Below, piece after piece: positions 1,682 through 64,000 of a stretch of DNA of 64,000 bases; position 1 is the first letter of the stretch; each line of letters begins with the position of its first letter. The position numbers were made by a program, and so were the translations under genes. Location: assembly GCF_006345805.1 (NCBI RefSeq), contig NW_021832831.1, positions 38,188 through 102,187 of the forward strand. Reading direction: 5' to 3'. This DNA comes from Octopus sinensis. Taxonomy: Eukaryota. A model generated the notes under the pieces. The model searched no databases. It had not been told where the DNA came from and saw only the letters and a program-made list of their open reading frames with translations.

Positions 1682-2863
1682 ATATATATATATAAATTAG
1701 AGAAAAACCACTATTATGTAATTCAAACAATGATAGATGTAAATCATACCATATAGAAAAAATAAAATATGTGATAAAACATTTACCAAGATCACAATAA
1801 AGTACATAATAATAAATAAACAAACAGTATATAAATAGTAAATAGACTACATATATTTTGTGGCCATATCTTCAATTTAAATTACAATTAAATTTAAATT
1901 TAATCGGAGCATTAAGTGTGGTTGCTTTGTGAAATAATTTGTAATGTAAAATATTATAGTATATGTAATGAAAAGTTTTAATTTCTTTTGTACTATTGAA
2001 TTGAATAATAATAATAAGTACTTTCGTTATTCCCTTAATATTCGAAATATTAGATCTGGGCTATGTTATATGTTTTAATTTAAAATTTTTTAGTTCATAA
2101 AATATCTTTGAAAAAATAAGTATACATTTTATTTAAAAAATAATGGTGAAATTCATATGATTATTGATTAAAAAAATATGTATTTCTAATTTTTTTTATT
2201 TTAATTATAATTTAAGATACATACATTTATTTAATTATTATTATTATAATAATTATTATATGTGAACTAAAATCTAAAATATTATTCATGGTTGTTTTGT
2301 GAAATAGTTTGTAACGTAAAATATTACAGTATAGGTAGTGAAAAGTTTTTTCTTTTTTTCTTTATATACTATTGAATTTAATAATAATAATAAGTACTTT
2401 GTTTATTGTATCAATGAGCGAAATATTACTTCTAGACATAAATTAATTTACTTATATAATAAGTTTAAATTATTTGTGAGTATATTTTTGAAATATATAC
2501 AAAATACTATTGCAGGGTTGTGGCTGCAGCATTGTTGATATAAGATATATTGTAAGTCTACACATGTTTGTGTAGGGTTTAGTACATAGTTAGAATCGTA
2601 TCAAATTAGATGTTTATTTAATTAGTAAATAAATATATAATTTAATTAATTAATGAATATAGATTAAATTATAGTAATTTAGCTTAACTTAAGTATATGA
2701 TGTATTTTAAGTATTTTTATTTTAATTAATTGGACTCATATATTTTTCCAGTAAAGATATACTATATCTTGTTTAGATTATTCTCAAAGTTAAAATATAT
2801 ATCTTCACAGATAAATTACATATTTCTATCTATTTACCCTATTTTTTCATGTTAGGTTTTTAA

Positions 2864-5800: not shown

Positions 5801-6172
5801 GGTGGCATGTAAGAGAACCTTCCATTTCGCGACCGTTGCCAGCACCGCCCCGACTGGCCTCGTGCCGATGGCACGTAAAAAGCACCATCCGTTCGTGTCC
5901 GTTGCCAGCCTCGCCTGGCCCTCGTGCCGGTGGCACATAAAAAGCACCATCCGTTCGTGGCCGTTTGCCAGCTCTGTCTGTGCGAGTGGCACGTAAAAAG
6001 CACCCACTACACTCACGGAGTGGTTGTCGTTAGGAAGGGCATCCAGCCGTAGAAACACTGCCAGATTTGACTGGGCCTGATGAAGCCTTCTGGCTTCACA
6101 GACCCCAGTAGAACCGTCCAACCCATGCTAGCATGGAAAACGGACGCTAAACGATGATGATGATGATGATGA
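2864..6172 (+). mobile_element. RTE-clade LINE, 5'-truncated, frameshifted, complete 3' UTR and (GAT)n tail
   Basis: APE motifs 'FVAGDFNGHVG' and 'SQIDYIL'; RT motifs 'QFGFVPG', 'FVDMEKAF', 'GVHQGSVLSPLLF', 'LLYADDL'; ends CATGGAAAACGGACGCTAAAC(GAT)n. Confidence 0.97.
2909..5544 (+). pseudogene. RTE EN-RT-PHD polyprotein, disrupted (ORF pieces 2909-3373, 3680-3898, 3906-4958, 5081-5263, 5215-5544)
   Basis: Consecutive ORF-track fragments in shifting frames reconstruct one LINE ORF. Confidence 0.93.
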
Positions 6173-9232: not shown

Positions 9233-9760
9233 TAGATGTCTCCCCTATGTACATCATGTTCATGTCTTTACAAGCACCTTCTATGCATCTTCTGCTGTAA
9301 ACTACATTTCGAGGTCTACGGTTAATGCCAGGGTTTGAAAAGTCAGGGAACTCCGTCAGATCACAACTATGTAGGATGTACCCCTTTGAGAATACCATAT
9401 GCACCAATGATAACTGCATGGTAAGTAGGATTAACCCTGGCATTAACTGTAGACGTCGAAATGTAGTTTACAGCATAAGATGCACAGAAGGTGCTTGTAA
9501 AGACATGAACATGATGTACATAGGGGAGACATCTAGGAGCATTGTGGAACGACTAAATGAACATCTGAGACAATATGATGACAAAAAACAGTCCTCCATA
9601 CTCTACCAACATGCCATGGAGGCAACTTGGGTCAACTTGACATCCACATCTTATCCAAGCACCCAAAAGACCCAACACTCAGACAAATACGGGAGTACAT
9701 CCTTATAAAGGAAACCTCCCCAATACTAAATAGGAAATATACATAGTAGATATCATACCT
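9233..9760 (+). mobile_element. Penelope-like GIY-YIG endonuclease fragment with a fold-back inverted 5' duplication
   Basis: ORF 9325..9708 'NCRRRNVVYSIRC...MYIGETSRSIVERLNEH'; 9233-9335 is the reverse complement of 9433-9535. Confidence 0.85.
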
Positions 9761-17589: not shown

Positions 17590-17659
17590 TAGCCCAGTCA
17601 TACTATCCAACTGATGCCAGCATGGACAACAGACGTTAAATGATGATGATGATGATGAT
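17590..17659 (+). mobile_element. Isolated RTE-type 3' tail (extreme 5' truncation or RTE-tailed SINE)
   Basis: GCCAGCATGGACAACAGACGTTAAAT(GAT)n. Confidence 0.8.
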
Positions 17660-28575: not shown

Positions 28576-29807
28576 TTGTATATATAATGCGTGCACACAC
28601 ACACACACACATATATACATATATATATATAATGTGTGCATTATGTGGTCGGTCGATTCAGCTGAAAATATGCACACCTATGTTAAAAGTGCTGGCAAGT
28701 TTGCATGACAACTATTTTTTTCCTCAAATGAAAGGCGTGACCTCTAGGACAAAATTCCTCATCTTATAAATTGTGGCCCCAGTAGACCCGAATGAAATCG
28801 GGTTATATTAACCAAAATGTGAAAAGGGGTTTAAATGGGGCTGGAAGGGGATTAAAATTTAAAGGAGCGGGTGTTTAGCAATTCTCTGTTACATCAAGCT
28901 AAAAAATTTGCGCCAGCCTTTTAATCGTCAATGTGTTGCCGTCCATGATGAAGAAGTTTTGAATGCTTGCCATCGTGAGTCTACTGTCGTGAGAAAGAAT
29001 CACTTCAAAACTTGGTGTTTATGAATTTTCTTTTACATCAAGTTCAAAATTTTACGCCAGCCGTTAAACTGTCAATACATTGCTGTCCATCGTTAAGAAA
29101 TGCCAGCCATGGTGACTCTACTATCCTCAGATTCTATCCCTTCAAACTTTGGTTTCCAATATTTTATTATTTTTATTCAGCTAGCAAGTTCGTCTGTCCT
29201 TTTTAAATGTTAGCGTTTTGCTGTCTGCCTTGAAGCAGACCTTTCCGTTGCCACTGCCTGATATTTATGATTGATCTTTCTAAATATTTTATTTCTCAAC
29301 TTACTCAAGATCTTTTGTTGTTTATAAATGGGAGAGAGATAGATAAAGATAGAGAGTAAGAGAAAGCGAGGGAGAGTCCGAGAGAAGGGAAGAGTAAGAG
29401 AGTGGGGAAAGTGAGAGAGAAAGGAGAGAGAAACAAAGAGGGAGAATCATCATCATCATCATCATCATCATCGTTTAACGTCCATTTTCTGTGCTAGCAC
29501 GGGTTGGACAGTTTGACTGGGGTCTGGAAAGCCAGGAGGCTGCACCAGGCTCCAGTCTGATCTGGCAGTGTTTCTACAGGTGGATGACCTTCCTAACGCC
29601 AACCACTCTGTGAGTGTAGTGGGTGCTTTTTTCGTGCCGCCGGCACTGGTTCCAGGGGGGCTCGTAGCGGTAACGATCGGTTGGTGCCAGTCAAGGTGGC
29701 GCTGCAATCGGCCACGTTCGGATGGTGCTTTTTATGTGCTGAAAGGAAGCAACAGAAAGTAACAACCACACTCTTACCCGCGCGTAGACCGGGTCACCTT
29801 CAGCTAG
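27874..29807 (+). mobile_element. Non-autonomous Helitron-like element
   Basis: 5' A|TCTCTATATATAAAACTG; 3' hairpin ACCCG-CGCGTAGAC-CGGGT, then 9 nt, then CTAG (29804-29807). Pairing the two ends as one element is inferred. Confidence 0.6.
29448..29745 (-). mobile_element. RTE 3' UTR/tail fragment nested in the Helitron-like element
   Basis: (CAT)nCGTTTAACGTCC... antisense tail. Confidence 0.85.
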
Positions 29808-30101: not shown

Positions 30102-30865
30102 GACAGAGTGTACTTTGAGAGAAAAGTTGGACCTAAGAAGCATCAGTTGTGGTGTGCAAGAGAGACGTTTGCGCTGGTATGGTCATGTGGTGAGAATGGA
30201 TGAAGGTAGTTGTGTGAAAAAGTGCCACACCCTAGCAGTTGAGGGAACCTGTGGAAGAGGTAGACCCAGGAAAACCTGGGACGAGGTGGTGAAGCACGAC
30301 CTTTGAACTTTAGGTCTCACCGAGGAAATGACTAGAGACCGAGACCATTGGAATTATGCTGTGCGTGAAAAGACCCGGCAGGATAAGTGAGGCCATAATC
30401 CCGTGGCCTCTACCTAGGATGTAGCCAGCCCACTTATGCGTTCCTTTCCTTCTTGGGACACAAAACTCCACTTGTGAAGACCTGTTGAGGCAAGTGAAAA
30501 TCAAAATTGTAATCTATCAACATCAGTGGAATTTGTAGCTGTGATACCAGTGCCGGTGGCACGTAAGAGAACCATCTGAACGTGGCCGTAGCCAGCGCCA
30601 CCCTGAATGGCTTCCGTGCCGGTGGCATGTAAAAAGCACCATCTGATCGTGGCTGTTTGCCAGCCTCGTCTGGCACCTGTACCGGTGGCTTGTAAAAAGC
30701 ACCCACTACACTCACGGAGTGGTTGGCGTTAGGAAGGGCATCCAGCTGTAGAAACACTGCCAGATCAGACTGGGCCTGGTGCAGCCTTCTGGCTTCCCAG
30801 ACCCCAGTTGAACCGTCCAACCCATGCTAGCATGGAAAGCGGACGTTAAACGATGATGATGATGA
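30102..30865 (+). mobile_element. 5'-truncated RTE (last codons plus 3' UTR) inserted in the Helitron
   Basis: 'LREKLDLRSISCGVQERRLRWYGHV' followed by the full UTR and tail; the flanks rejoin as in 49925-49960. Confidence 0.92.
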
Positions 30866-30994
30866 CGAACCATTAAGAGTGGACATCTATTTTGCTAGAA
30901 GATCCGCTATGGTCTTATATGCTACACCCCTGGTTTTCAATTCATATTAATCAAATTAATATTCAATCTTTCACCCTTATTATTTTAATTCAAA

Positions 30995-35739: not shown

Positions 35740-36745
35740 CACACTCACCTCCAGTAGATGCAGCAAATGTGACATGAATGAATAATGGTTGATTAACTGT
35801 GAGGACAACTGACATGTGTGTTACTGGCAAATGCTTGTTGAAAGTTTCTTTTTAGATGCTGTATGCTGTCACCCATCCCTGTTCCCTCCTACCTCCGATT
35901 TCACTTCCTTACAGTTGGCACTGTCACTGTAGGCACATTGAAAGGTAGGTCTGGTGAGATAGTTGAGATGTCTCAGTGGAAGTGTGCCAATATGTGTTGT
36001 ATTCAAGAAGAAGGGTGGAGGGGAGCTTCATCCAGGTTCCTCACAGGCAAAGAACATAAGTATAAAATCTTCTAGGAAGACAATAATGGTGGGGTAGGTG
36101 GTGTTAGCATACTTTTATTTAATAAATTGGTGGATAAGGTAATTGAGGTACTCAGACTGTGAGAGAGGATATTTAAGCTTAGATTAGTTACACAAGGTAG
36201 TACAGCAACAATTATTTCCACCTGTGCTCCTCAACCATATCTACCAAATGAACAAGAGGATCGATTTTGCAGACTGCTTCAAGGACAAATGCCAGTGACC
36301 TTATTTTCATGACTGGTGACTTCAGTGGACATGTTGGACAGCATCCAGTTGGCTTCGGTGGTGTACATGGTGTACCTTCTGGGGTGAGAAATCTACCCCT
36401 TATCATAGGTTAGTCATTAGTGACCTCAGACTTCAGGCTAGAAGAATTCCAAGAAGCAGACCAGTCTAGAAAAGAAGGATTTGGAAGCTTAAGGATCAGT
36501 GATTTAAAGACACTTTAAATGAAGCATTTGATGAAGAAAGGTTACAGAAATGTAACCTAGAGGACAACTTGGAGTTTCTACAGGTTAATTTAGTGAGAGC
36601 CACTGATCAAATTTGTGCCTGGTGCAAAGTCCCAACTAGATGTAGGGACATGGTTGTAGGACAGTGTAGTAGACAGGGCCATTAGACAAAGAAACAGGCC
36701 TGGAAGAATTGGAAGAGTAGTGGCATCAGAGAACTACATTAGATA
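35740..36745 (+). mobile_element. RTE 5' portion (leader plus APE endonuclease), decayed
   Basis: 'VGTVTVGTLKGRSGEIVEM...CCIQEEGWRGASSRFL'; the leader is homologous to 54960-55085. Confidence 0.85.
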
Positions 36746-36844
36746 GACTGAACGGAATTAAATTTTGTTCGATTATTATTGTAAAAATATTGATTTCTAT
36801 ATTTGTTATTTGATAATTATAAGTTACGATATGTATATTTATTT

Positions 36845-39505
36845 CATCATCATCATCGTTTAACGTCCGCTTTCCATGCTAGCATGGGTTGGACGATTTG
36901 ACTGAGGACTGGTGAACCAGATGGATGCACGAGGCTCGAATCTGATCTGGCAGAATTTCTACAGCTGGATGCTCTTCCTAATGCCAACCACTCCAAGAGT
37001 GTAGTGGGTGTTTTTACGTGCCACAAGCAAGAGGGCCAGTGAGGCAGTACTGGCAACGGCCATGCTCAAATGGTGTTTTTACATACCACCTGCACAGGAG
37101 CCAGTCCAGTGGCACTGGCAACGACATTGCTTGAATGTTTTTTTATGTGCCACCAGCACAAATGCCAGTAAGGTGACGCTGGTAACGATCACGCTCAAAT
37201 GGTACTTTTTACATGCCCCTTGCATGGAAGTCAGTTAGCTACTCTGGCAATGATCATGCTCGGATGGGGCTCTTAGCGCTCCACTAGCATGGATGCCAGT
37301 TATCGAATTTGATTTTGATTTCACTTGCCTCAACAGGTCTTCGCAAGCAGAGATTAGTGTTCAGAGAAGGAAAAGGTACGCAGAAGTGGGCTGGTTACAC
37401 GCCTGGCACAGGCAAACGAGGTTATGGTCTCATTTGGCTTGCCGGGTCTTCTCAAGCACAGCATATTTCCTAAGGTCTTGGTCACTAGTCATTGCCTCGG
37501 TGAAGCCTAAAGTTCAAAGGTCGTGCTTCACCACTTCACCCCAGGTCTTCCTAGGTCTGCCTCTTCCACAGGTTCACTCAACAACGAGGGTGTGGCACTT
37601 TTTCACACAGCTATCATCATCCATTCACGCCACATGACTATACCAGCACAGTTGTCTCTCTTGCACTTTAGATCTGATGCTTCTTAGGTCCAACTTTTCT
37701 CTCAAGATACTTAAACTCTGTCAAGTATGCACACTGACATTACACATCCATCAGAGCATACTGGCTTCATTCTTCGCGAGCTTACTCATGTCCTCAGCAG
37801 TCACGGCCCATGTTTCACTGCCATGTAGCATGGCTGTCTGTACACATGCGTCATACTGTCTACCTTTTACTCTGAATGTAAGAGCTCTCTGAACTTTGCC
37901 CAGGCTATTCTTTTTCTAGCAGCTACACTTTCAGCGCACCCTCCTCCGCAACTGACTTGGTCACCTAGGTAATGGAAGCTATCAACTACTAGTTTTTCTC
38001 CCTGGAACATGGTGGAAGTTGTTCTCTGCACATTTTCAGTGTTTATTGCTCCTGAGCATCTGCCACATACAAAAACTATCTTCCCAGTTAGCCTTCCTTT
38101 GATATTGCTGCACCTCTTATGTGTCCATAGTTTACACTGGGTTCATCTTATAGAGTATCTACCTATGCCTTTTCTACAGATCGAGCAAAGCCATCTACCT
38201 GAAGGGATTTGTGATTTGTCTGCCCCCCCTTATTAGGAATTTTGGTTTTAGCTAGGTTGACTCTAGTTTTGATAGTGACTCAGCAATTAGGGCAAGGTCA
38301 TCAGCATAGGGGAGCTCCCAGGGGCATCCTGTCTTGAATTCGTCTGTTATTGCCTGGAGGACTATGATAAATAGGAGGAGACTGAGGACTGAACCTTGGT
38401 GGGCCTGTACCTTTATCTGGAATTCGTCACTGTATTCATTGCCAACCCTCACCTTACTGACAGCGTCCCTGTACTTAGATTGCACAGCTCTTACTAACCA
38501 TTCATCTATCCCTAGTTTCCTCATTGGCCACCAGATAAGGGATCAGGAAAACCCTGTTAAAGGCTTTCTCCATGTCAACGAAAGGCAGGTACAGAGGTTT
38601 ATCTTTGGCTAAGTATTTCTCCTGCAGCTGTCTCACCACAAATATAGCATCAGAGGTGCTTTTTCCTGGCATGAACCCAAACTGTGACCCTCTCTGTGAC
38701 CTTCATTACCTGATCCAACAGCTTGATATCTCTGTAATTATTTGTATCTAAAGCATCACCTTTACCTTTGTAGCAGTTGACTATAGTGCTGCTACACCAG
38801 TCATTGGGTATGACTCCTTCATGTATTACCTGGTTAACTATACAGGTGGCTAGGCTATAGCCAACACTGCCAGATATTTTGAGCATTTCTGCAGTGATTC
38901 CTGATGGGCCGGTGGGTTTTCCCTGTCTTCATACTCTTAATTGCTTTATCTACCAATGTACTGTCAACTCGGATTGCTGGTCCCTCTGTTGGGTTGACAT
39001 TCGGCAAACTCTATTTCTCTCATTCATTTTCTTTATTGAGCAACCTTTCATAGTGGCGTCTCTTTGCAGCCTAGTTTAGTGCAAGTGAACCATTATCCAT
39101 GCAGACACATTTCTCTCCTACCACTTCACGATTCTGTCTCACACACTGTCTTGCAACACGAAATATCTCAAGTCGTTGGTCCTTACGGTGCAGAACATTG
39201 GCAAATTTTTCCTTATCCGCTTCCCCTCTAGCTAAATAAATCTGTCTCCTAGCTTCCCAGTCTGATACAATTCCCTGTTACCACCATTCTTCTAGTCCTT
39301 CCTTCCAAGCCTGTTTCTTTTGTCTAACAGCCCTGTCAACAACATTGTTCCACCACCATGTTATTTTGGATCAAGAGGGAACTTTGCACCAGCCACAGAT
39401 CTGGTCAGTGGCCCTCAGCAGGTCCCATAGAAACCTCCAGTTGTCTTCTGTGAAGCTATATCCCCTTCTATTTCGTCAAAGGCTTCAAGTAATATGTCTT
39501 ATTTT
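36845..39505 (-). mobile_element. RTE copy, 5'-truncated, tail at 36845
   Basis: (CAT)nCGTTTAACGTCCGC tail; ORFs 38252..38524 and 38650..38886. Confidence 0.93.
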
Positions 39506-39659
39506 TATTATTGTCATTATCTTGTGAATGATAATCTTAACGTATTACATAAATTTACATTGGGAAATAGTTTTGTAAGACAAAATCTTATTGAATGGGT
39601 AGGAATTTTTATTTGTTATGTAATATTGCATTTAAGTAAATACTTTTAATAATAATAGG

Positions 39660-39868
39660 AACTTTGAATAATTCTATTAATGAGTGTAACATTAAATCTA
39701 TATATAAATTTATTATATAAGTTTAACTAATTTCATCATCAACATCATTATCGTTTAACATCCGTTTTAAACGATGATGATGATGATGATGATGAAATTA
39801 GTTAAACTTATATAATAAATTTATATATAGATTTAATGTTACACTCATTAATAGAATTATTCAAAGTT
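39660..39868. repeat. ~209-bp near-perfect palindrome centred on an RTE tail
   Basis: 39660-39740 and 39788-39868 are exact reverse complements (81 bp); 8-nt centre CATCCGTT. Confidence 0.95.
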
Positions 39869-39949
39869 TGTGTGTATATATTTGAACCATTTTTCTATTT
39901 TTAATTATTGTAGTTATAGTTTGTAGTAGTATTATGTATATAAGTTAGA

Positions 39950-41641
39950 ATGAAGTTTTTTAGTATATATTACATAATTAGAATAAGATTTCCCACTGAT
40001 ATTGACGTTAGAGAAGCGAACGAAGTTGACTCTCAACATAAAATCTCGGACATAACCTTCACTGCCACTGACATCATAGCAGCAATAAATGAGGTCAAAT
40101 ACTACTCTGCTGTAGGCCCTGATAGATTCCCCGCTAGTCTCCTGAAGGAATGTAGACACCAACTTGCAGTCCCTCTGACCAACCTCTGGAGAAATTCGTT
40201 AGATGCAGGTTATATACCGAAACAGTTTCTATCCCAGTCAATCATCCCGGTTTTCAAACAGGGAAACAGATCCCTCGCACTCAACTATCGTCCAATCTCA
40301 CTCACCTCTCACATCATCAAAGTGTTTGAAAGAGTGTTAAGATCAAGGATGGCTGACTTCCTGGAGACCCAGAAACTCCTAAATGCAAATCAGCATGGCT
40401 TTCGCTGTGGCAGGGACTGTCTAACACAGCTCTTACACCACATTGAAGATGTACTCAAAGCCTTGGGAACAGGTTCGAACTCTGATGTCATATATCTTGA
40501 CTTCAGTAAAGCGTTCGACAGGGTAGACCATAATATCCTACTCTCAAAATTGGCAAATGTTGGAATCCGTGGAAAAGTTCTACACTGGATCAAGTATTTC
40601 CTGGCGAATAGAACACGACATGTTGTAGTTGATGGAGTCCACTCAAGCCCAGCAAAAGTCACCAGCGGTGTCCCCCAGGGAACTGTCTTGGGTCCGCTAC
40701 TCTTCATAATCTACATAAACGACCTTTCCAGTGTCGTACATTACTGCAAAGTGAAAATATTTGCTGATGACACCAAGCTCCAGCAAATCGTCAATGAAGA
40801 AGCAGACCGAACTCAACTCCAGTCTGATCTATATGCTGTGAGTCAATGGGCAGACAGAAACAAAATGCAACTGAACGAGGGAAAATTTGAGCTGATGCAT
40901 TTTGGAAGAAATTCCTCACTAAAACAGCCATACTCTCTTCCTTCAGGGGAACCGCTCACAGCCTCTAACAACATCAGAGACCTAGGTGTAATTGTTGATG
41001 ACGATCTCAGTTGGAGTGCACACGTCAACAAGAAGGTCGATATAGCTCGTAGGATGAGTTCCTGGATCTTAAGAACTTTCCGGTCCAGAGAACAAGGTGT
41101 CATCATACCACTCTTCTCCTTTGTACGGCCACACCTCGAATACTGCTGCCCACTGTGGTCTCCCCATACAAGACAAAACATCTCGAGGATTGAATCACCC
41201 CAGAGAGCACTCACTAAACGAATTGAAGGCATGGCTGCTCTCGATTATTGGGATCGCCTTAAAGCCTTGAAACTCTACTCTCTCCAGCGTCGCCGTGAGC
41301 GGTACATCATTTGTACGATGTGGAGAATATACCGCCAACTTTGCCCAAACGACCTGAACATTAGCTTCAAGGTTCATCCAAGACTGGGACCACGAGCCAT
41401 ACGTCCCCTGCCCAATTCAAGATCACACCATACATATACACTACAACATAATTTCTTTTCCTCAACAGGCCCTGCCCTATTTAACATTGTCCCGAAAGAG
41501 ATCAAAGAGGAACAGGATCCCATCAACTGTAAACGGAGTCTGGATAGATTCCTTCAAGGAATACCAGATAAGCCACCCATAATTGGATACAACTCACCCA
41601 ACAAAAACTCACTACTTGAATGGACCATAAGCAAAACTTGA
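39950..41641 (+). CDS. CR1-group LINE reverse transcriptase, uninterrupted frame (5'-truncated; the first ~15 codons are flank)
   Basis: 'NYRPISLTSHIIKVFER', 'QHGFRCGR', 'YLDFSKAFDRV', 'SGVPQGTVLGPLLFIIYINDL', 'FADDTKL', 'RPHLEYC', 'LYSLQRRRER'. Confidence 0.9.
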   Translation: MKFFSIYYIIRIRFPTDIDVREANEVDSQHKISDITFTATDIIAAINEVKYYSAVGPDRFPASLLKECRHQLAVPLTNLWRNSLDAGYIPKQFLSQSIIPVFKQGNRSLALNYRPISLTSHIIKVFERVLRSRMADFLETQKLLNANQHGFRCGRDCLTQLLHHIEDVLKALGTGSNSDVIYLDFSKAFDRVDHNILLSKLANVGIRGKVLHWIKYFLANRTRHVVVDGVHSSPAKVTSGVPQGTVLGPLLFIIYINDLSSVVHYCKVKIFADDTKLQQIVNEEADRTQLQSDLYAVSQWADRNKMQLNEGKFELMHFGRNSSLKQPYSLPSGEPLTASNNIRDLGVIVDDDLSWSAHVNKKVDIARRMSSWILRTFRSREQGVIIPLFSFVRPHLEYCCPLWSPHTRQNISRIESPQRALTKRIEGMAALDYWDRLKALKLYSLQRRRERYIICTMWRIYRQLCPNDLNISFKVHPRLGPRAIRPLPNSRSHHTYTLQHNFFSSTGPALFNIVPKEIKEEQDPINCKRSLDRFLQGIPDKPPIIGYNSPNKNSLLEWTISKT

Positions 41642-41746
41642 CTTAAACAGGATTCAAATAATCCTATCAGGTGGTGCTATTAAGTTAGACATGGCCTGGA
41701 CCAATCATTGGTCGAAACACATCTAAGTTTATCTAAGTTTAAGTTT
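39995..41746 (+). mobile_element. CR1-group LINE, 5'-truncated, with 3' stem-loop and (ATCTAAGTTT)n tail
   Basis: RT ORF, hairpin GACCAA-TCA-TTGGTC at 41698-41712, tail ATCTAAGTTTATCTAAGTTTAAGTTT at 41721-41746. Confidence 0.9.
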
Positions 41747-41826
41747 ATATAAATAATTTAATGGATATAGATTAAATTATTGTATTTTAGCTTCACTTAA
41801 TGTATATTATGTATTTTATATATATA

Positions 41827-43088
41827 TCTCTATATATATAAAACTGAGAATGTGTGTCTGTCTGTCTGTGTGTTTCCCTAAAACTTGAGAACTACACAAC
41901 CAATTTCATTCAAATTTTACACATGCTTTACTTAGAGTCTGGGGAGTATCATCAGCAAAAAATATTTTTTACTTCATGCCTAGGGTGAGCCCACAGTAAT
42001 ATCATATCTTCTCCACTACGATTCCCTAAAACTTGAGAACTACACAACCAATTTCATTCAAATTTTACACATGCCTTACTTAGGGTCCATGTAGTTTCAT
42101 GGACAAAAAAAATGTTCAACTTCTTGCCTAGAGCAAGCCCATAGCTATATCATATCTTGTCCACTATTTCAGTATTATGTGTTAAAAGTGAAACAAAAAC
42201 ATTTCTCTATTTTATGTCAGATGCTTTCACTTTAACAATAAAAATAATAATAACAATTGAATTATATGTAGTAAGTAGTAATTAAAATCAAACTAAAGTA
42301 TAATATAATTGTAACATAACAAAAGTAAAAATAGCAATTGGTATAAAATTGCATCAATGACTTGAACTTCAATAAGTGGCTTCACATGAATGGGAATAAA
42401 TTGAAAATAAAATTAGCGTGCAGAAATGGAATAGTCCAGATGGACTATTATACATAAAGGACTATAGCTTCAACTGCATACAATTGTTATTATTATTACT
42501 GTTTAACTATTGTTATCACGTTTGTTGGTTCCTCGTAAGGGAAACGTTGTTGTGCTGCATTTGTTAAATAATTGTAAACTGTAACCTTCCCCCTTTGGGA
42601 GAAGGAGCTTTGGTTATTGTTTAAAAATTGAATTGTATCCCTGTTTGGGGAAATTGACAATATTTTCACCGTTTACACGGAAGCATTATTGTTAGAATGC
42701 CGTCAATAGAAGAAAGTCCAAAAATGAATTTCACTGAAGCCGTCGGCAGGTGCAAACTCATTAAAATTAAAATGGAAGAAATACAAGCCTATTTCGGAAT
42801 GATTACTGACAAAGACGGTGAATCTAGGATAACACCAACAAACAAAATAAAAAATTAAATTAAAGAAAAGACTATTGTCTATAAAATATACAATGTAGAG
42901 AAAAAAAAAAGATTTGAACACCTGGAGGAAAGCACCATCGAAAAGTGTCTTGGTGCGACTATGAAAGATATAACTTTGTATTTTGTATTTTAAGTGTAGA
43001 TGTATATATATATAGATGTACATGTAATATGTACACATATATACATGCACTAGTACTATGACCCAGCAATGACAGGTCATAATGCTTG
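41827..43088 (+). mobile_element. Short non-autonomous Helitron (1262 bp), tandem copy 1
   Basis: A|TCTCTATATATATAAAACTGAG 5' end; 3' hairpin TATGACCC-AGCAATGAC-AGGTCATA, then ATGCTTG|T (CTAG mutated to CTTG). Confidence 0.85.
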
Positions 43089-43393
43089 TATATATGTATA
43101 TATTGTTTTAATTATTTTGTTTTAATTACTTTTAATTTTCGTTATTTTTTCTTCTATAAGCTAAAATATATTTTCATAGATGAAATAAATATTTCTATCT
43201 ATTTATTCTAGTTTTATTTACACCATGTTTTTAATGATATAAATATATTATAAACACTTAGTCCTTTGTATTAAGTTTAAAGATTTAATAATCAGAATAT
43301 ATTCGATAAGATATTTCGTGTTTTTGTTTTAAGATATATTGTTGAATTTTGTTGGATTTTTTTATTAGAAAATTACATATTTTTATATATATA

Positions 43394-44655
43394 TCTCTAT
43401 ATATATAAAACTGAGAATGTGTGTCTGTCTGTCTGTGTGTTTCCCTAAAACTTGAGAACTACACAACCAATTTCATTCAAATTTTACACATGCTTTACTT
43501 AGAGTCTGGGGAGTATCATCAGCAAAAAATATTTTTTACTTCATGCCTAGGGTGAGCCCACAGTAATATCATATCTTCTCCACTACGATTCCCTAAAACT
43601 TGAGAACTACACAACCAATTTCATTCAAATTTTACACATGCCTTACTTAGGGTCCATGTAGTTTCATGGACAAAAAAAATGTTCAACTTCTTGCCTAGAG
43701 CAAGCCCATAGCTATATCATATCTTGTCCACTATTTCAGTATTATGTGTTAAAAGTGAAACAAAAACATTTCTCTATTTTATGTCAGATGCTTTCACTTT
43801 AACAATAAAAATAATAATAACAATTGAATTATATGTAGTAAGTAGTAATTAAAATCAAACTAAAGTATAATATAATTGTAACATAACAAAAGTAAAAATA
43901 GCAATTGGTATAAAATTGCATCAATGACTTGAACTTCAATAAGTGGCTTCACATGAATGGGAATAAATTGAAAATAAAATTAGCGTGCAGAAATGGAATA
44001 GTCCAGATGGACTATTATACATAAAGGACTATAGCTTCAACTGCATACAATTGTTATTATTATTACTGTTTAACTATTGTTATCACGTTTGTTGGTTCCT
44101 CGTAAGGGAAACGTTGTTGTGCTGCATTTGTTAAATAATTGTAAACTGTAACCTTCCCCCTTTGGGAGAAGGAGCTTTGGTTATTGTTTAAAAATTGAAT
44201 TGTATCCCTGTTTGGGGAAATTGACAATATTTTCACCGTTTACACGGAAGCATTATTGTTAGAATGCCGTCAATAGAAGAAAGTCCAAAAATGAATTTCA
44301 CTGAAGCCGTCGGCAGGTGCAAACTCATTAAAATTAAAATGGAAGAAATACAAGCCTATTTCGGAATGATTACTGACAAAGACGGTGAATCTAGGATAAC
44401 ACCAACAAACAAAATAAAAAATTAAATTAAAGAAAAGACTATTGTCTATAAAATATACAATGTAGAGAAAAAAAAAAGATTTGAACACCTGGAGGAAAGC
44501 ACCATCGAAAAGTGTCTTGGTGCGACTATGAAAGATATAACTTTGTATTTTGTATTTTAAGTGTAGATGTATATATATATAGATGTACATGTAATATGTA
44601 CACATATATACATGCACTAGTACTATGACCCAGCAATGACAGGTCATAATGCTTG
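43394..44655 (+). mobile_element. Short non-autonomous Helitron, tandem copy 2
   Basis: Offset 1567 bp from copy 1; ORF-track translations 42703..43080 and 44270..44647 are identical. Confidence 0.85.
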
Positions 44656-44959
44656 TATATATGTATATATTGTTTTAATTATTTTGTTTTAATTACTTTT
44701 AATTTTCGTTATTTTTTCTTCTATAAGCTAAAATATATTTTCATAGATGAAATAAATATTTCTATCTATTTATTCTAGTTTTATTTACACCATGTTTTTA
44801 ATGATATAAATATATTATAAACACTTAGTCCTTTGTATTAAGTTTAAAGATTTAATAATCAGAATATATTCGATAAGATATTTCGTGTTTTTGTTTTAAG
44901 ATATATTGTTGAATTTTGTTGGATTTTTTTATTAGAAAATTACATATTTTTATATATAT

Positions 44960-46345
44960 CATCATCATCATCATCGTTTAGCGTCCGCTTTCCATGCTGG
45001 CATGGGTTGGATGGTGCAGCTGGGGTCTGGGAAGCCAGAAGGCTGCACCAGGCCCAGTCTGATCTGGCAATGTTTCTATGGCTGGATGCCCTTCCTAACG
45101 CCAACCACTCCATGAGTGTAGTGGGTGCTTTTTACGTGCCACCTGCACAGGTGCCAGACAAGTCTGGCCAACGGCCACGGTCGGATGATGCTTTTTACGT
45201 GCCACCTGCACGGAGGCCAGGCCAGGCTGGCAACGGCCACGATTGGATGGTGCTTTTTACGTGCCACCGGCACGGAAGCCAGTCAGGGCAGCACTGGCAA
45301 CGGCCACGTTCAGATGGTTCTCTTATGTGCCACCAGCACTGATATCACAGCAACAGTTTCCATTCATGTTGATCAATTTTGATTTTTGATTTTTTCCATT
45401 TTTGATTTTTTGACTTTCACTTGCCTCAACAGGTCTTCACAAGTAGGGTTTCGTGTCCCAAGAAGGAAAGGTATGCATAAGTGGACTGAGGCCATGGATG
45501 ATGGTCTCACTTGTCCTGCCGGGTCTTCTCACGCACAGCATACTTCCAAAGGTCTCGGTCTCTAGTCATTTCCTCGGTGAGACCTAAAGTTCGAAGGTCG
45601 TGCCTCACCACCTCATCCAGGTTTTCCTGGGTCTGCCTGTTCCACAGATTCCCTCAAGAGCTAGGGTGTGACACTTTTTCACACAACTATCTTCATCCAT
45701 TCTCGCCACATGGCCATACCAGCGCAAACGTCTCTCTTGCACACCGCAACTGATGCTTCTTAGGTCCAACTTCTCTCTCAAGGTATTTACACTCTGTCGA
45801 GGATGAACACTGACATTACACATCCATTGGAGCATACTGGCTTCATTTCTTGCGAGCTTACGCATATCCTCAGCAGTCACGGCCCATGTTTCACTGTCAT
45901 GTAGCATGGCTGTTTGTACACAAGCATCATACAGTCTATCTTTTACTCTGAGCGAGAGGCCTTTTGTCCCTAGCAGAGGTAAGAGCTCTCTGAACTTTAC
46001 CCAAGCTATTCTTACTCTAGCAGTTACACTTTCAACACACCCGCCCCCGCTACTGACTTGGTCACCTAGGTAACGGAAGCTATCAACTATTTCTAGTTTT
46101 TCTCCCTGGAAAGTGACGGAAGTTGGTCTCGGAGCATTTTCAGTGTTTATTGCTCCTGAGCATCTTCCACATACAAGACGTTGCTGCACCTCTTGTGTGT
46201 CCATAGCTTACACTTGGTGCATCTTATAGAGTTTCTACCTACGCCTTTCCTACAGATCAAGCAAGGCCATCTACCTGAAGGCGTTTGTGACTTGTCTACC
46301 TTCCTACTTATTAGGACTTTGGTTTTAGCTAGGTTGACTAGGTTG
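44960..46345 (-). mobile_element. RTE 3' portion (PHD to tail)
   Basis: Tail (CAT)nCGTTTAGCGTCCGC at 44960; ORFs 45605..46204 and 46147..46383. Confidence 0.93.
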
Positions 46346-58920: not shown

Positions 58921-59199
58921 TGATAACTAAGACCTTTGGCATTATATTGTGCTTGAGAAGATCCATCAAGCCAAACAAAATCGCAATTGTGGCAGATACC
59001 ATTGTTACGCAAACTGGTACCCATGCCGGTGGCACGTAAAAACACCCTTTACCCTCTTGGAGTGGTTGGTGTTAGGAAGGGCATCCAGTCATAGAAAACC
59101 ATGCCACATGAGACTGGAGTCTGGTGCAGCCTTTCCAGCATGCCAGCCCAGTCAAACTGTCCAGCCCATGCCTGCATGGACAATGGACGTTAAATGATG

Positions 59200-59235
<36 letters not shown>

Positions 59236-59237
<2 letters not shown>

Positions 59238-59362
59238 TCATCTACATTTAACATCCACTGACCATGCTTGCATGGGATGGATAGTTTGACCAGGGCTGGT
59301 AAGCCGAGGCACTGCACCAGACTCCAGTCTGATTTGGTATGGTTTCTACAGCTGGATGCCCT
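59236..59362 (-). mobile_element. RTE tail fragment, tail-to-tail with the previous copy across (TA)n
   Basis: CATCATCTACATTTAACATCCACTGACCATGCTTGCATGGG antisense tail. Confidence 0.8.
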
Positions 59363-60772: not shown

Positions 60773-63700
60773 AAGAACACAAGTACAAGATTTTCTGGGC
60801 AGGAAACACTGACGGGGTTGGAGGCGTGGTATACTTCTCGCTGAAAAATGGGTAGATAAGGTAATTGAGGTAATCAGAGTAAGTGACAGAATACTTAAGA
60901 TTAGATTAGTGCTTCATCATGGATTAGCAACCATTATATCGGCCTACGCCCCTCACCTGGGGCTACCCGATGGACAGAAAGACCGATTCTATGACACTCT
61001 ACTGTCGAGCGACAGAGACCTTCGCTTTGTGGCTGGTGACTTCAATGGTCACATTGGACGACATGCTGGAGGCTTCCATGGTGTACATGGGGGCTATGGT
61101 TATGGCTCCCGCAACGACGAGGGAACCAGGCTGCTGGAGTTCTGCGATGCAAATGATCTTATGGTTTGCAACACTAACTTCAAGAAACCTACCAGCCACC
61201 TAGTCACCTACCCATCGGGCCGACATACCAGCCAAATTGACTACATCCTTGCCAGGAAAACGGAAAGATGGCTGCTTATAAATGCCAAAACCTTCCCAGG
61301 CGAAGAATGTACCCCACAACATAGACTGGTAGTTAGTGACTTTAGGATCAGGACTAAGAGGACGACCAGAAGACGACCAACTTGGAGAAGAAGGATCTGG
61401 AAGCTTAAAGATCCTGCAAATGAACAGAGACTTAGGGACATATTACTTGAAGCCTTTGACAAAGTAGAAGGGGATATAGCTTCACAGGGGGTAGAAGACA
61501 ACTGGACGTTTCTAAGGGACAACCTGCTGAGAGCCACGGACCAGATATATGGCTGGTGCAAAGTCCCCTCTCGATCCAAAATAACGTGGTGGTGGAACAA
61601 TGTTGTAGACAGGGCTATTAGAGAAAAGAGACAGGCTTGGAGGGACTGGAAAAATGGTGGTAGCAGGGAATTGTATCAGACTACCAAAAGAGAAGCTATG
61701 AGACAGGTTTATTTAGCCAGAGGGGAAGCAGACAAGAAAAAATTTGCCAATGTTCTGCACTGTGAGGACCAAAGACTTGAGGTATTCCGTGTTGCAAGAC
61801 AGTGTGTGAGAGAGAATCGTGATGTGGGAGGAGAGAAATGTGTTCACATGGATGATGGTTCACTTGCGCTAAATGAGGATGCAAAGAGAGAGGTTTGGAG
61901 ACATCCTTATGAGAGGCTGCTAAATAAGGAAAATGAATGGGATAAAGAGAGTCTGCTGAATGTCGACGCAACAGAGGGACCAGCTATCTGAGTTAACAGT
62001 TCCTTAGTAGTTAAGGCAATTAGTAGTATGAAGACAGGGAAAGCCCCAGGCCCATCAGGAATTACTGCAGAAATGCTTAAAATATCTGGTAGTGTCGGCT
62101 ATAGCCTAGTCACCCATATAGTTAACCAGGTGATACACGAAGGAGTCATACCAATGACTGGTGTAGCAGCATAATAGTCAACTGCTACAAAGGTAAGGGT
62201 GACGCTTTAGATACAAATAATTACAGAGGTATCAAACTGTTAAGTCAGGTATTGAAGGTTACGGAGAGGGTCATAGCCCAACTGATTAGGGAGAGAGTCA
62301 GCTTGGATGAGATGCAGTTTGGTTTCGTGCCAGGAAAAAGCACCACTGATGCCATATTTCTGGTGAAACAGCTGCAGGAGAAATACCTAGCCAAGGATAA
62401 GCCCCTGTACCTGGCTTTCATTGACATGGAGAACGCCTTTGACAGGGTCCCCCGATCCCTTATCTGGTGGTCAATGAGGAAACTAGGGATAGATGAATGG
62501 TTAGTGAGAGCTGTGCAAGCCATGTACAGAGACGCTGTAACTAAGGTGAGGGTTGGCAACGAGTACACTAAAGAATTCAAAGTAGAGGTAGAGGTCCACC
62601 AAGGTTCAGTCCTCAGCCCCCTCCTATTTATCATAGTCCTCCAGGCAATAACGGAGGAATTCAAGACAGGATGCCCCTGGGAGCTCCTCTACGCTGATGA
62701 CCTTGCTCTAATTACTGAGTCACTATTAGAAATAGAGGCAAAGTTTCAAGTGTGGAGACAAGGATTAGAACCAAAGGGCCTTAAAATCAACCTAGCTAAA
62801 ACCAAAGTCTTAATATGTAGGAAGGCAGGCAAATCACAAACGCCTTCAGGTAGATGGCCCTGCTCAATCTGTAGAAATGGTGTAGGTAGAAACTCTATAA
62901 GATGCACTAAGTGTAAGCTATGGACACATAAGAGGTGCAGCAATGTCAAAGGAAGGCTAACTGGGAAGATAGTTTTGGTATGTGGCAGATGCTCAGGAGC
63001 AATAAACACTGAAAATGCGCAGGGACCAACTTCCGCCACATTCAAGGGAGAAAAACTAGAAGCAGTTGATAGCTTCCGTTACCTAGGCAACCAAGTCAGT
63101 AGCAGGGGCGGGTGTGCTGAAAGTGTAACTGCTAGAATAAGAATAGCCTGGGCAAAGTTCAGAGAGCTCTTACCCCTGCTGGTGACAAAAGGCCTCTCGC
63201 TCAGAACAAAAGGCAGACTGTATGATGCATGAGTACGAACAGCCATGCTACATGGCAGTGAAACATGGGCCGTGACTGCTGAGGATATGTGTAAGCTCAC
63301 AAGAAATGAAGCCAATATGCTCCGATAGATGTGTAATGTCAGTGTTCATAGTCGACAGAGTGTAAGTACCTTGAGAGAAAAGTTGAACCTAAGAAGCATC
63401 AGTTGTGGTGTGCAAGAGAGACGTTTGCACTGGTATGGTCATGTAGCGAGAATGGATGAAGATAGTTGTGTGAAAAAGTGCCACACCCTGGCGGTTGAGG
63501 GAATCTGTGGTAGAGGTAGACCCAGGAAAACCCGGGATGAGGTGGTGAAGAACGACCTTCGAACTTTAGGTCTCACCGAGGAAATGACAAGAGACCCAGA
63601 CTTTGGAAGTATGCTGTGCGTGAGAAGACCTGGCAGGACAAGTGAGACCATAACCCGTGGCCCCTACCTGGGACGTAGCCAGTCCACTTATGCATACCTT

Positions 63701-64000
63701 TCCTTCTTGTGACACAAACCCTACTTGTGAAGACCTGTTGAGGCAAGTGAAAATCAAAATCAAAATGAAAATCAAAATCGAAATTGAAATCTCTCAACAT
63801 CAATGGAAATTGTAGCTGAGATACCAGTGCCGGTGGCATGTAAGAGAACCATCCGAACGTGGCCGTTGCCAGCCTCGTCTCGCACCTGTGCAGATGGCAC
63901 ATAAAAAGCACCCACTACACTCACGGAGTGGTTGGTGTTAGGAAGGGCATCCAGCTGTAGCAACACTGCCAGATCAGACTGGGCCTGGCACAGTCTCCTG
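60769..64000 (+). mobile_element. RTE copy, 5'-truncated in the endonuclease, running off the window within the 3' UTR
   Basis: ORFs 60909..61991 (360 aa), 62252..63232 (326 aa) and 63329..63712. Confidence 0.97.

What the first reader, a model, noticed from the sequence alone, without database searches (positions are those of the whole stretch)
39660..39868. Fossil snap-back retrotransposition: 33 nt of RTE cDNA, a fold-back, and an inverted copy of the target
Seen: the host AT-rich element should read ...AACTAATTT|GTGTGTATAT (compare 2465-2490). Inserted at that point are the antisense RTE tail (CAT)n-CGTTTAACATCCGTT, which is exactly the first cDNA made by target-primed RT, then its own reverse complement, then a perfect 74-nt reverse complement of the upstream genomic flank, rejoined through a TTT microhomology. 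Inference: RT aborted, the nascent strand folded back and copied itself and the target DNA. The perfect arms imply a recent event or homogenisation by cruciform repair.
Basis: partly seen in the sequence, partly recalled or inferred. Interest (0 to 1): 0.7.

Follow-up and report, generated by a model that had tools for sequence, protein, structure and literature searches.

The report
Fold-back scar of aborted RTE insertion
A 135-base insert in an octopus-type genome looks like a jumping gene (an RTE element) that began copying itself into the DNA, stopped after about 35 bases, and folded back to copy itself and 74 bases of neighbouring DNA. The mechanism is already known from laboratory R2 and human L1 work.

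Summary
Bases 39660-39733 and 39795-39868 are perfect reverse complements. Counting part of the repeat, the perfect arms are 82 nt. It is the only palindrome in the 64-kb window that is not a (TA)n run.

Between the arms lie a (CAT)n-like run, then CGTTTAACATCCGTTTT, the antisense 3' end of the local (ATG)n-tailed RTE family, and then TTAAACG(ATG)7.

An older paralogue at 2123-2597 lacks the insert. The two flanks joined together match it 30/34 straight across the junction.

The best reading is one event. Target-primed reverse transcription started at ...AATTT|, stopped after 33-37 nt, and the 3' end snapped back on TT/AA. It then copied the cDNA and 74 nt of the primed strand, and rejoined the other end through a TT microhomology.

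- The repeat arms are not identical; they differ by two substitutions and a 3-nt indel.
- The microhomology is 2 nt, not 3.
- The polymerase is unknown.

This class of event is known from R2 "snap-back" junctions and from L1 inverted duplications and foldbacks. This is a new natural member of it, not a new kind. It could not be checked against reads or other individuals.

The parts
39660..39733 (+). Left arm. This is the original target DNA, the 3' end of the primed strand, ending ...AACTAATTT.
   Evidence: It is colinear with the upstream host DNA 39499-39659 and with the paralogue 2238-2475. It is the perfect reverse complement of 39795-39868.
39734..39751 (+). First cDNA, repeat part: CATCATCAACATCATTAT, the antisense of the (AUG)n tail.
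   Evidence: It lies directly between the target T and CGTTTAAC, as in the ordinary copies. Its 18 nt fall within the family range of 12-24 nt.
39752..39768 (+). First cDNA, unique part: CGTTTAACATCCGTTTT, the antisense of the last 17 nt before the RTE tail repeat. The last 2-4 T are ambiguous between RNA template and fold-back.
   Evidence: The tail pattern has 9 hits against 0.00 expected. The piece is 17/17 identical to L010 5262-5287.
39759..39766 (+). Hairpin loop CATCCGTT. It is RTE-derived and present once, and it fixes the polarity of the event.
39767..39794 (+). Fold-back copy of the cDNA: TTAAACG(ATG)7, in sense orientation.
   Evidence: It is the reverse complement of the left cDNA apart from 2 substitutions and a 3-nt indel in the repeat.
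39795..39868 (+). Right arm: an inverted duplicate of the 74 nt of target upstream of the nick.
   Evidence: Exact reverse complement. It is absent from the paralogue.
39867..39869 (+). Rejoining junction. TT is shared by the end of the arm and the target TTT. T39869 is target only, which gives a target-site duplication of 1-3 nt.
   Evidence: Read from the sequence. The arm would continue with C (complement of G39659), whereas the target reads TTTGTGTG, as the paralogue does at 2473-2480.
39870..39985 (+). Host AT-rich DNA downstream of the insert.
   Evidence: The first 17 nt match the paralogue 15/17. The whole stretch is only weakly similar on its own (17 of 1000 shuffles score as high), but it lies between significant colinear blocks.
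2123..2597 (+). Paralogous copy of the host AT-rich block, about 67% identical. It is uninterrupted at both the RTE site and the palindrome site, so it serves as the 'empty site'.
   Evidence: Colinearity continues at 2640-2709, which matches 41747-41818 at 87.5%.
36844..39498 (-). An ordinary 5'-truncated RTE insertion (2.65 kb) in the same host block, 235 nt upstream and in the same orientation. It shows what a completed event looks like.
   Evidence: Tail (CAT)4CGTTTAACGTCCGCTTT at 36844. RT fragments with a weak RVT_1 match below Pfam's cut-off (23.2 against 29.6 bits) and a YADD motif. About 81-83% identical to the copies at 3343-5677, 61437-63764 and 1-1290.

Best explanation
This is a single aberrant target-primed reverse transcription (TPRT) event of the local (ATG)n-tailed RTE family, or of a short element carrying the same tail.

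1. The element's endonuclease nicked the + strand after ...AACTAATTT (39733).
2. That 3' end primed on the (AUG)n tail, and 33-37 nt of cDNA were made: the (CAT)n run plus CGTTTAACATCCGTT(TT).
3. Synthesis on RNA stopped at the foot of the inner stem of the conserved 3' stem-loop, or at the end of a broken template.
4. The free 3' TT paired with the AA of the cDNA's own CGTTTAAC.
5. A polymerase, either the element's RT or a host repair polymerase, copied back along the cDNA and then along 74 nt of the primed strand itself.
6. The new 3' end (...CAAAGTT) joined the other side of the break at TTTGTGTG through 2 nt of microhomology, and the bottom strand was filled in.

Shown by the sequence: the parts, their order and polarity, the two junctions and the uninterrupted paralogous site. 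Inferred: the order of the steps, one event rather than two, the stall point and the enzymes. The two repeat arms diverged later, or slipped during fill-in.
For: - The arms are perfect over 82 nt and this is the only complex palindrome in the window.
- The centre is the RTE tail in cDNA orientation, 0.00 expected by chance, and matches an O. sinensis tail variant 17/17.
- Polarity: the loop carries RTE sequence that runs on from the left arm only.
- The paralogue 2123-2597 lacks the insert, and the joined flanks match it 30/34 against 23/34 for the next best site.
- Both ends of the insert map to one bond of the empty site.
- The ...T|CAT priming junction and the repeat length match the ordinary copies.
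- The same AT-rich block took two more LINE insertions, so it is a favoured endonuclease target.
- The cDNA ends where the conserved two-part RNA stem-loop begins. That stem-loop has 10 predicted pairs, 3 of them with compensatory changes.
- The same junction class has been seen experimentally. [quoted passage not shown] L1 insertions occur with small-hairpin, 2-bp-microhomology inverted duplications and with foldbacks of the RT-extended end (bioRxiv 10.1101/2024.12.14.628481).
Against: - There is one locus and one assembly, with no reads, no second individual and no orthologous locus.
- The repeat arms differ by 2 substitutions and a 3-nt indel while the other 81 arm positions are identical (Fisher p = 0.03 for substitutions, 0.006 with the indel). 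A pure copy model needs later change confined to the repeat to explain this.
- There is no clear target-site duplication (1-3 nt at most). Duplications of the family's normal insertions could not be measured in this AT-rich DNA for comparison.
- No second example turned up in about 73 kb of other octopus DNA.
Confidence: 0.68

Rival explanations
1. Two separate events. First an ordinary, extremely 5'-truncated RTE insertion of about 35 nt. Later a replication template switch, or fold-back repair of an unrelated break, added the inverted copy.
For: Very short tail-only fragments of this family exist, for example about 65 nt at 17595-17659. Fold-back priming at breaks by host polymerases is well documented (PMC10622511; PMC4912351 and PMC5728401). 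The differences in the repeat arms would fit an older first step.
Against: The turn-round lies inside the RTE piece, and the return point is exactly the boundary between the RTE piece and the target. No downstream target base sits in the loop. That coincidence is unforced only if the cDNA end was a free 3' end, that is, one event. There is also no target-site duplication around the supposed first insertion.
Confidence: 0.12
2. No RNA was involved. A break at 39733 was patched by copying DNA from a genomic RTE tail, for example the neighbour at 36844, whose flank also ends in ATTT. Snap-back and end joining followed.
For: Both sites read ...ATTT|CAT, so 4 nt of microhomology with the neighbour's flank are available. 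Repair with insertions templated from nearby DNA is known.
Against: The neighbour has (CAT)4 and CGTTTAACGTCCGCTTT. That is 2 of 17 differences and a shorter repeat, whereas the palindrome arms show no decay. The piece matches another tail variant 17/17. The junction looks like that of the other TPRT insertions.
Confidence: 0.05
3. Two cDNAs were involved. The same site was nicked on both sister chromatids, each primed its own cDNA, the two 3' ends annealed through TT/AA, and the bridge was resolved 74 nt into the second chromatid.
For: It would explain why the two repeat runs differ in length and sequence while the flanks are identical. L1 bridges between sister chromatids are described in PMC7058536.
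Against: It needs an extra break 74 nt upstream on the sister chromatid and a precise rejoin. Intramolecular snap-back gives the same sequence with fewer steps.
Confidence: 0.05
4. Sequencing or assembly artefact, such as a fold-back chimera or a hairpin mis-assembly.
For: Perfect arms; no independent assembly or reads were reachable.
Against: An artefact would not place a transposon tail in cDNA orientation at an endonuclease-type site in the centre. It would not return to the forward strand at exactly the bond it left. It would not leave the two repeat arms different.
Confidence: 0.05
5. A miniature foldback transposon (MITE-like) with long terminal inverted repeats.
For: It is a hairpin-shaped insert in AT-rich DNA. 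The window holds one unrelated 103-nt inverted repeat at 9233-9535.
Against: The left 'repeat' is host DNA colinear with the paralogue. The window has no other copy of the arm. The centre is an RTE tail.
Confidence: 0.02

Closest known systems
'Snap-back' 5' junctions of R2-protein-driven TPRT in human cells (PRINT; PMC11371274)
   Same: The cDNA 3' end primes further DNA-templated synthesis complementary to the cDNA, and less often to the adjacent target DNA, before the 5' junction forms. The result has the same geometry: target, antisense cDNA, turn, sense copy.
   Different: That system is R2, site-specific with a restriction-like endonuclease, running on engineered templates in cultured cells, and read out by amplicon or genome sequencing. 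Here the event is a natural one carried in the assembled genome, in an octopus-type genome, from an element with an APE-type endonuclease. The cDNA is only about 35 nt, and 74 nt of target were copied.
L1 insertions with local inverted duplication, and foldbacks of the 'primary RT end' (bioRxiv 10.1101/2024.12.14.628481; PMC7058536)
   Same: Break ends made during TPRT self-anneal through about 2 bp, prime synthesis and give an inverted duplication of genomic DNA next to the insertion. Foldback junctions that contain the TPRT insertion are described.
   Different: The two small inverted duplications shown there are on the reciprocal end. Foldbacks of the RT end are kilobase- to chromosome-scale and somatic, and are explained by replication and fusion. 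Here the fold-back is on the RT-extended end, is 74 nt long, and was resolved into a simple insertion.
Synthesis-dependent microhomology-mediated end joining and Pol theta snap-back; Pol delta foldback priming at breaks (PMC2943611, PMC5728401, PMC4912351, PMC10622511)
   Same: A 3' single strand folds on a short self-complementarity and is extended. The new end is then used for a microhomology join with the other side.
   Different: From my own knowledge, not checked here, those templated inserts are usually a few to a few tens of nt and need no retroelement. Here the folding end is a nascent cDNA and 109 nt in all were copied: TTAAACG, (ATG)7, the 74-nt arm, and the 7 that overlap the stem.
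Twin priming (5'-inverted L1 insertions)
   Same: An inverted segment inside a LINE insertion, made during TPRT.
   Different: In twin priming both segments are copied from the RNA and ordinary target-site duplications result. Here the inverted segment is a copy of the cDNA plus target DNA. The criteria rest on my own knowledge of Ostertag and Kazazian 2001, which was not read here.

Membership tests
RTE-clade non-LTR retrotransposon (source of the central piece) | A single coding region with an APE-type endonuclease followed by a reverse transcriptase. | tested here: met
   Copies at 2909-6172 and 60909-63978 encode the C-terminal half of an Exo_endo_phos-type nuclease (GDFN...SDH), then an RT domain with YADD. 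A weak RVT_1 match, below Pfam's cut-off, was obtained on the neighbouring copy's fragment only. The frames are broken in all copies.
RTE-clade non-LTR retrotransposon (source of the central piece) | The 3' end is a short tandem repeat rather than poly(A), and the element is about 3.2-3.3 kb long. | tested here: met
   Seven tails end in ...GGACGTTAAACG(ATG)4-8. The copy at 2909-6172 is about 3.26 kb, though its 5' end is not certain.
RTE-clade non-LTR retrotransposon (source of the central piece) | Phylogenetic placement of the RT and endonuclease within the RTE clade. | tested here: inconclusive
   No tree was built. The nearest named homologues are 'craniofacial development protein 2-like' of Octopus bimaculoides (79%), O. 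sinensis and O. vulgaris. From my own knowledge, that name is given to BovB/RTE-derived genes. RTE LINEs are documented in octopus (PMC9115989).
Target-primed reverse transcription insertion | The element's 3' tail abuts the target in cDNA orientation, at a site like those of other family members. | tested here: met
   The junction reads ...AATTT|CATCAT..CGTTTAAC. The other copies read ...TTATTT|CAT...ATATAT|CAT...GAAT|CAT and ...CAATT|CAT.
Target-primed reverse transcription insertion | A target-site duplication flanks the insert. | tested here: inconclusive
   Only 1-3 nt (T to TTT) can be duplicated. Duplications of the normal copies could not be defined in this AT-rich DNA.
Snap-back or foldback junction of a TPRT intermediate | Antisense cDNA turns into its own complement at a short self-complementarity. 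| tested here: met
   The centre is CGTTTAA [CATCCGTT] TTAAACG. The minimal primer pairing is TT/AA. The local hairpin folds at -5.8 kcal/mol, z = -4.0.
Snap-back or foldback junction of a TPRT intermediate | The copy continues from the cDNA into the adjacent target strand, then joins the reciprocal end. | tested here: met
   There is a 74-nt exact inverted copy of the primed flank and a TT microhomology at 39867-39868. The downstream flank resumes at the same bond as in the paralogue.
Snap-back or foldback junction of a TPRT intermediate | The event is made in one step during retrotransposition, and the polymerase is identified. | not testable with these tools
   This needs de novo events in an assay, or alleles that represent intermediate states.
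MITE or foldback DNA transposon | Terminal inverted repeats belong to the mobile unit, which exists in multiple copies with target-site duplications. | tested here: not met
   The left arm is host DNA colinear with the paralogue. The window holds no other copy of the arm.
Twin-priming 5' inversion | The inverted segment is derived from the element RNA only. | tested here: not met
   The inverted segment contains 74 nt of target DNA.
Known structured RNA or miRNA hairpin | A match to an Rfam family at its gathering score. | tested here: not met
   Only generic hairpin matches of 22-28 bits, against gathering scores of 70-110.

The most novel reading that the evidence does not exclude
Snap-back could be a regular by-product of this RTE family. 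The RT would stall at the foot of the 3' stem-loop it recognises, the T-run and TTTAA motif of the tail would make the nascent cDNA self-priming, and the genome would be seeded again and again with perfect hairpins of cDNA plus flank. Such hairpins could serve as small-RNA precursors or fragile sites, and their arms could be kept identical by conversion within the palindrome. A weaker variant: the unequal repeat arms record two cDNAs from sister chromatids annealing to each other.
Probability: 0.1. Interest if true: 0.6.

Novelty: new member of a known kind. Interest (0 to 1): 0.38.

Why it matters
Snap-back and foldback resolution of TPRT intermediates has been documented in the papers read here in engineered R2 systems, in induced L1 clones and in cancer genomes. 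A small, cleanly resolved example carried in an assembled genome, from a different LINE clade in a mollusc, would show that the same side reaction happens in nature. It would also show that a LINE can create a perfect hairpin and a local inverted duplication while leaving almost none of its own sequence behind. Repeat annotation would miss such scars, and they would be read as unexplained palindromes. The locus gives a concrete search pattern for counting such events genome-wide. On its own it is a single non-coding scar with no indication of function.

Tried and rejected
- Independent copies of the locus. The 563-aa RT ORF 82 nt downstream is not on record, and its best homologues are at most 60% identical (Argonauta hians). 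No other assembly of the site could be fetched.
- Metagenome scan for TCGTTTAAC N{0,30} TTAAACGATGATG. All seven hits are chance matches in unrelated DNA, with no (CAT)n run and no inverted flanks.
- More octopus DNA. L008 (O. bimaculoides), L009 (O. vulgaris) and L010 (O. sinensis) add about 73 kb and contain the same tail family, but no second snap-back.
- Target-site duplications of the normal RTE copies. No clear duplication could be called, because the flanks are AT-rich and the 5' ends uncertain.
- Right flank alone against the paralogue. It is not significant by itself: 17 of 1000 shuffles and 6 of 70 AT-rich background segments score as high. The empty-site argument therefore rests on the 34-mer across the junction and on the colinear blocks either side.
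- Rfam gave only sub-threshold generic miRNA-like hairpin matches.
- Rejected readings: a MITE (the left arm is host DNA), twin priming (the inverted part contains target DNA), and chance (z = -24.5).
- A literature search for 'ORF2p' together with 'snap-back' found nothing.

Full report
**What is there.**
On the + strand the region reads as follows:
- 39660-39733: 74 nt of AT-rich DNA ending AACTAATTT
- 39734-39751: CATCATCAACATCATTAT
- 39752-39758: CGTTTAA
- 39759-39766: CATCCGTT
- 39767-39773: TTAAACG
- 39774-39794: (ATG)7
- 39795-39868: 74 nt that are the exact reverse complement of 39660-39733
- then TGTGTGTATAT...

The perfect arms are 82 nt, because the first 8 nt of the repeat also pair. 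In a census of perfect-arm inverted repeats (arm at least 20 nt, spacer at most 60 nt) this is the longest; the other 24 of the 25 longest (111 found in all) are (TA)n runs. A BLAST search for local inverted repeats gives the same picture. Folded as single-stranded DNA, the stretch gives -91.8 kcal/mol against -17.4 +/- 3.0 for shuffles, z = -24.5. The palindrome is real and is not chance.

**The centre is the tail of a resident LINE family.**
- The window holds many elements whose sense strand ends ...CCATGCTAGCATGGAAAGCGGACGTTAAACG(ATG)4-8.
- Longer copies (2909-6172, 60909-63978, 36844-39498 on the minus strand, and 1-1437) encode the C-terminal half of an APE-type endonuclease, a reverse transcriptase with YADD, and a Cys-rich motif.
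- The nuclease ORF's named relatives are 'craniofacial development protein 2-like' of Octopus bimaculoides (79% identity), O. sinensis and O. vulgaris. The other RT in the window is closest to a protein of Argonauta hians.
- The window therefore comes from an octopod. The family has the hallmarks of RTE: APE plus RT, about 3.3 kb, and a short-repeat tail. RTE LINEs are documented in octopus (PMC9115989). I built no tree, so clade placement rests on these features and names.
- The pattern CATCGTTTAACRTCCGYTTT (up to 3 mismatches) occurs 9 times in the window against 0.00 expected, and 39749-39768 is one of the hits. The 17 nt CGTTTAACATCCGTTTT are identical to a genuine tail in O. sinensis, L010 5262-5287. 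The single difference from the window consensus (A for G) is thus an existing variant and need not be later decay.
- Short elements carry the same tail, so the template may have been an RTE RNA or an RTE-dependent short element.

**The host sequence and the empty site.**
- The AT-rich DNA around the palindrome is one copy of an old duplicated block.
- Joining 36735-36843, 39499-39733 and 39870-39985 gives a sequence that aligns colinearly with 2123-2597 at 67% identity. Colinearity resumes at 41747-41818, which matches 2640-2709 at 87.5%.
- Relative to the paralogue, this copy has taken three insertions:
  - a 5'-truncated RTE at 36844-39498;
  - the 135-nt palindromic insert;
  - a second, unrelated LINE at 39986-41746, carrying the 563-aa RT ORF.
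- The 34-mer made of the 17 nt before and the 17 nt after the palindromic insert has its best match in the whole window, on either strand, at 2459-2492 (30/34). The next unrelated match is 23/34.
- The right flank taken alone is only weakly similar to the paralogue. The argument rests on the junction 34-mer and on the flanking colinear blocks.

**Polarity.**
The left arm is colinear with the host block and the paralogue, so it is the original and the right arm is the copy. The unique RTE sequence runs from the left repeat through CGTTTAA into the loop (CATCCGTT) and up to TTTT. That is the antisense, cDNA orientation, attached to the 3' end of the + strand flank. The right half holds only TTAAACG(ATG)7, which is what copying the left half would give. 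This asymmetry is what the snap-back model predicts.

**Junctions.**
- Left junction...AATTT|CAT. The ordinary copies read ...TTATTT|CAT (36844)...ATATAT|CAT (44958)...GAAT|CAT (29446) and ...CAATT|CAT (6172). A T or AT before the first CAT is general, consistent with the target end pairing with the (AUG)n tail.
- Turn-round: the 3' TT of ...CCGTT(TT) pairs with the AA of CGTTTAAC. Extension then gives TTAAACG(ATG)n and runs on into the flank.
- Right junction: the arm ends ...CAAAGTT. If copying had continued the next base would be C (complement of G39659). Instead the sequence is TGTGTG, the target after AATTT. The overlap is TT, and T39869 is target only, which gives a target-site duplication of 1-3 nt.
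- Both ends of the insert thus map to one bond of the uninterrupted site.

**Where the cDNA stops.**
An alignment of 12 tails predicts a conserved two-part stem-loop in the RNA: CGUCC ... CCAUG CUAG CAUGG ... GGACG, followed by UUAAACG(AUG)n. It has 10 pairs, 3 of them with compensatory changes. The cDNA in the palindrome crosses the outer stem and the internal loop and ends at the foot of the inner stem. It is a reasonable inference that the enzyme paused there, or ran off a broken template. This is not shown.

The left repeat, CAT CAT CAA CAT CAT TAT, and the complement of the right repeat, (CAT)7, differ by two substitutions and one 3-nt unit. The other 81 paired positions are identical. 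The differences are concentrated in the repeat: Fisher p = 0.03 for substitutions alone and 0.006 with the indel counted. Because the right arm is the perfect one, copying errors are an unlikely cause. More likely causes are later mutation or slippage in the left repeat, or slippage while the bottom strand was filled in across a hairpin. Less likely is two independent cDNAs from sister chromatids. The imperfection also argues against a sequencing chimera.

**Mechanism and rivals.**
- **Best explanation (about 0.68).** A single aberrant TPRT event resolved by snap-back synthesis and a microhomology join.
- **Which polymerase did the fold-back copying is open.** R2 protein systems show this junction class in cells (PMC11371274). 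Host Pol theta and Pol delta perform snap-back and foldback priming at resected ends.
- **Two-step rival (about 0.12).** A tiny RTE insertion came first and an inverted duplication later. This requires the later event to turn inside the RTE piece and to return exactly at its boundary.
- **DNA-templated patch (about 0.05).** Copying from the neighbouring RTE tail at 36844 is disfavoured by 2/17 mismatches and a shorter repeat.
- **Artefact (about 0.05).** This is hard to square with a transposon tail in cDNA orientation at an endonuclease-type site, with the exact return to the departure bond, and with the unequal repeats. No reads were available to settle it.
- **MITE and twin priming.** Both fail their defining features.

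**Comparison with what is known.**
- Work on induced L1 clones and cancer genomes describes L1 insertions with inverted duplication of adjacent genomic DNA through a small hairpin with 2-bp homology. It also describes foldbacks of the RT-extended end that contain the TPRT insertion. L1 bridges causing foldback inversions were reported earlier.
- The octopus locus has the same logic. It differs in element clade, in being carried in an assembled genome rather than seen in cultured cells or tumours, in its very small size, and in leaving only about 35 nt of element sequence.
- It is a new member of a known kind.

**Limits.**
There is one locus in one assembly. No further example was found in 73 kb of other octopus DNA or in a metagenome scan. 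No independent assembly of the site was reachable. Age cannot be estimated beyond 'no decay in 2 x 81 nt', which means either a recent event or homogenised arms.

Noticed in passing
window 41814-44959: 41814-43392 is 100% identical to 43381-44959 over 1579 nt. This is a tandem duplication with a period of 1567 nt that ends at the RTE tail at 44958. It is either a very recent duplication or an assembly artefact.
   Followed up: no
window 59078-59362; L008 16340-16892: Two RTE/SINE 3' ends lie tail-to-tail across a (TA)n or (TG)n run, with arms 75-80% alike. The arrangement occurs once in the window and once in O. bimaculoides. It probably reflects insertions into both strands of a palindromic microsatellite target, but a recurrent dimeric arrangement is possible.
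   Followed up: partly
window 29446-29655 and 30670-30868: Two RTE 3' ends sit with their tails pointing outward. They are 89% alike, closer than most copy pairs, and 1 kb apart with another repeat between them. The outer flanks are not inverted copies, so this is not a second snap-back.
   Followed up: partly
window 9233-9335 / 9433-9535: A 103-nt inverted repeat, 96% complementary, with a 97-nt spacer and ordinary base composition. It may be a small element with terminal inverted repeats.
   Followed up: no
window 36735-41818 versus 2123-2709: An old duplicated AT-rich block, about 67% identical. One copy has taken three LINE-related insertions within 3.2 kb of host sequence and the other copy none.
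   Followed up: yes
RTE 3' ends, e.g. window 30814-30845 and 36864-36895 (-): A conserved two-part RNA stem-loop, CGUCC..CCAUG-CUAG-CAUGG..GGACG, lies 7 nt before the (AUG)n tail. It shows compensatory changes, for example GUGCUAGCAC in the copy at 29466-29546. It is a likely recognition element for the RT.
   Followed up: partly
window 3906-4958 (+) and 62252-63232 (+): The RTE ORF carries a Cys-rich motif after the RT domain (CSICRKGVGRNSIRCTKCKLWTHKRCSNVKGRL...VCGRCSG), which looks like a PHD or zinc finger. It was not classified.
   Followed up: no
window 45124-45339 and 37007-37302: 62-65-nt tandem repeats, 3.4 copies in the first array, lie inside the 3' region of the RTE copies.
   Followed up: no
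L009 13670-13793 and L009 7018-7533 / 7813-8323 (O. vulgaris): A 124-nt palindrome unrelated to RTE tails, and a 519-nt inverted repeat at 96% identity with a 280-nt spacer that overlaps two called genes.
   Followed up: no
window 39715-39814: Rfam gives only sub-threshold miRNA-precursor-like matches to the hairpin (22-28 bits against gathering scores of 70-110). This is a generic effect of a long hairpin containing triplet repeats.
   Followed up: yes
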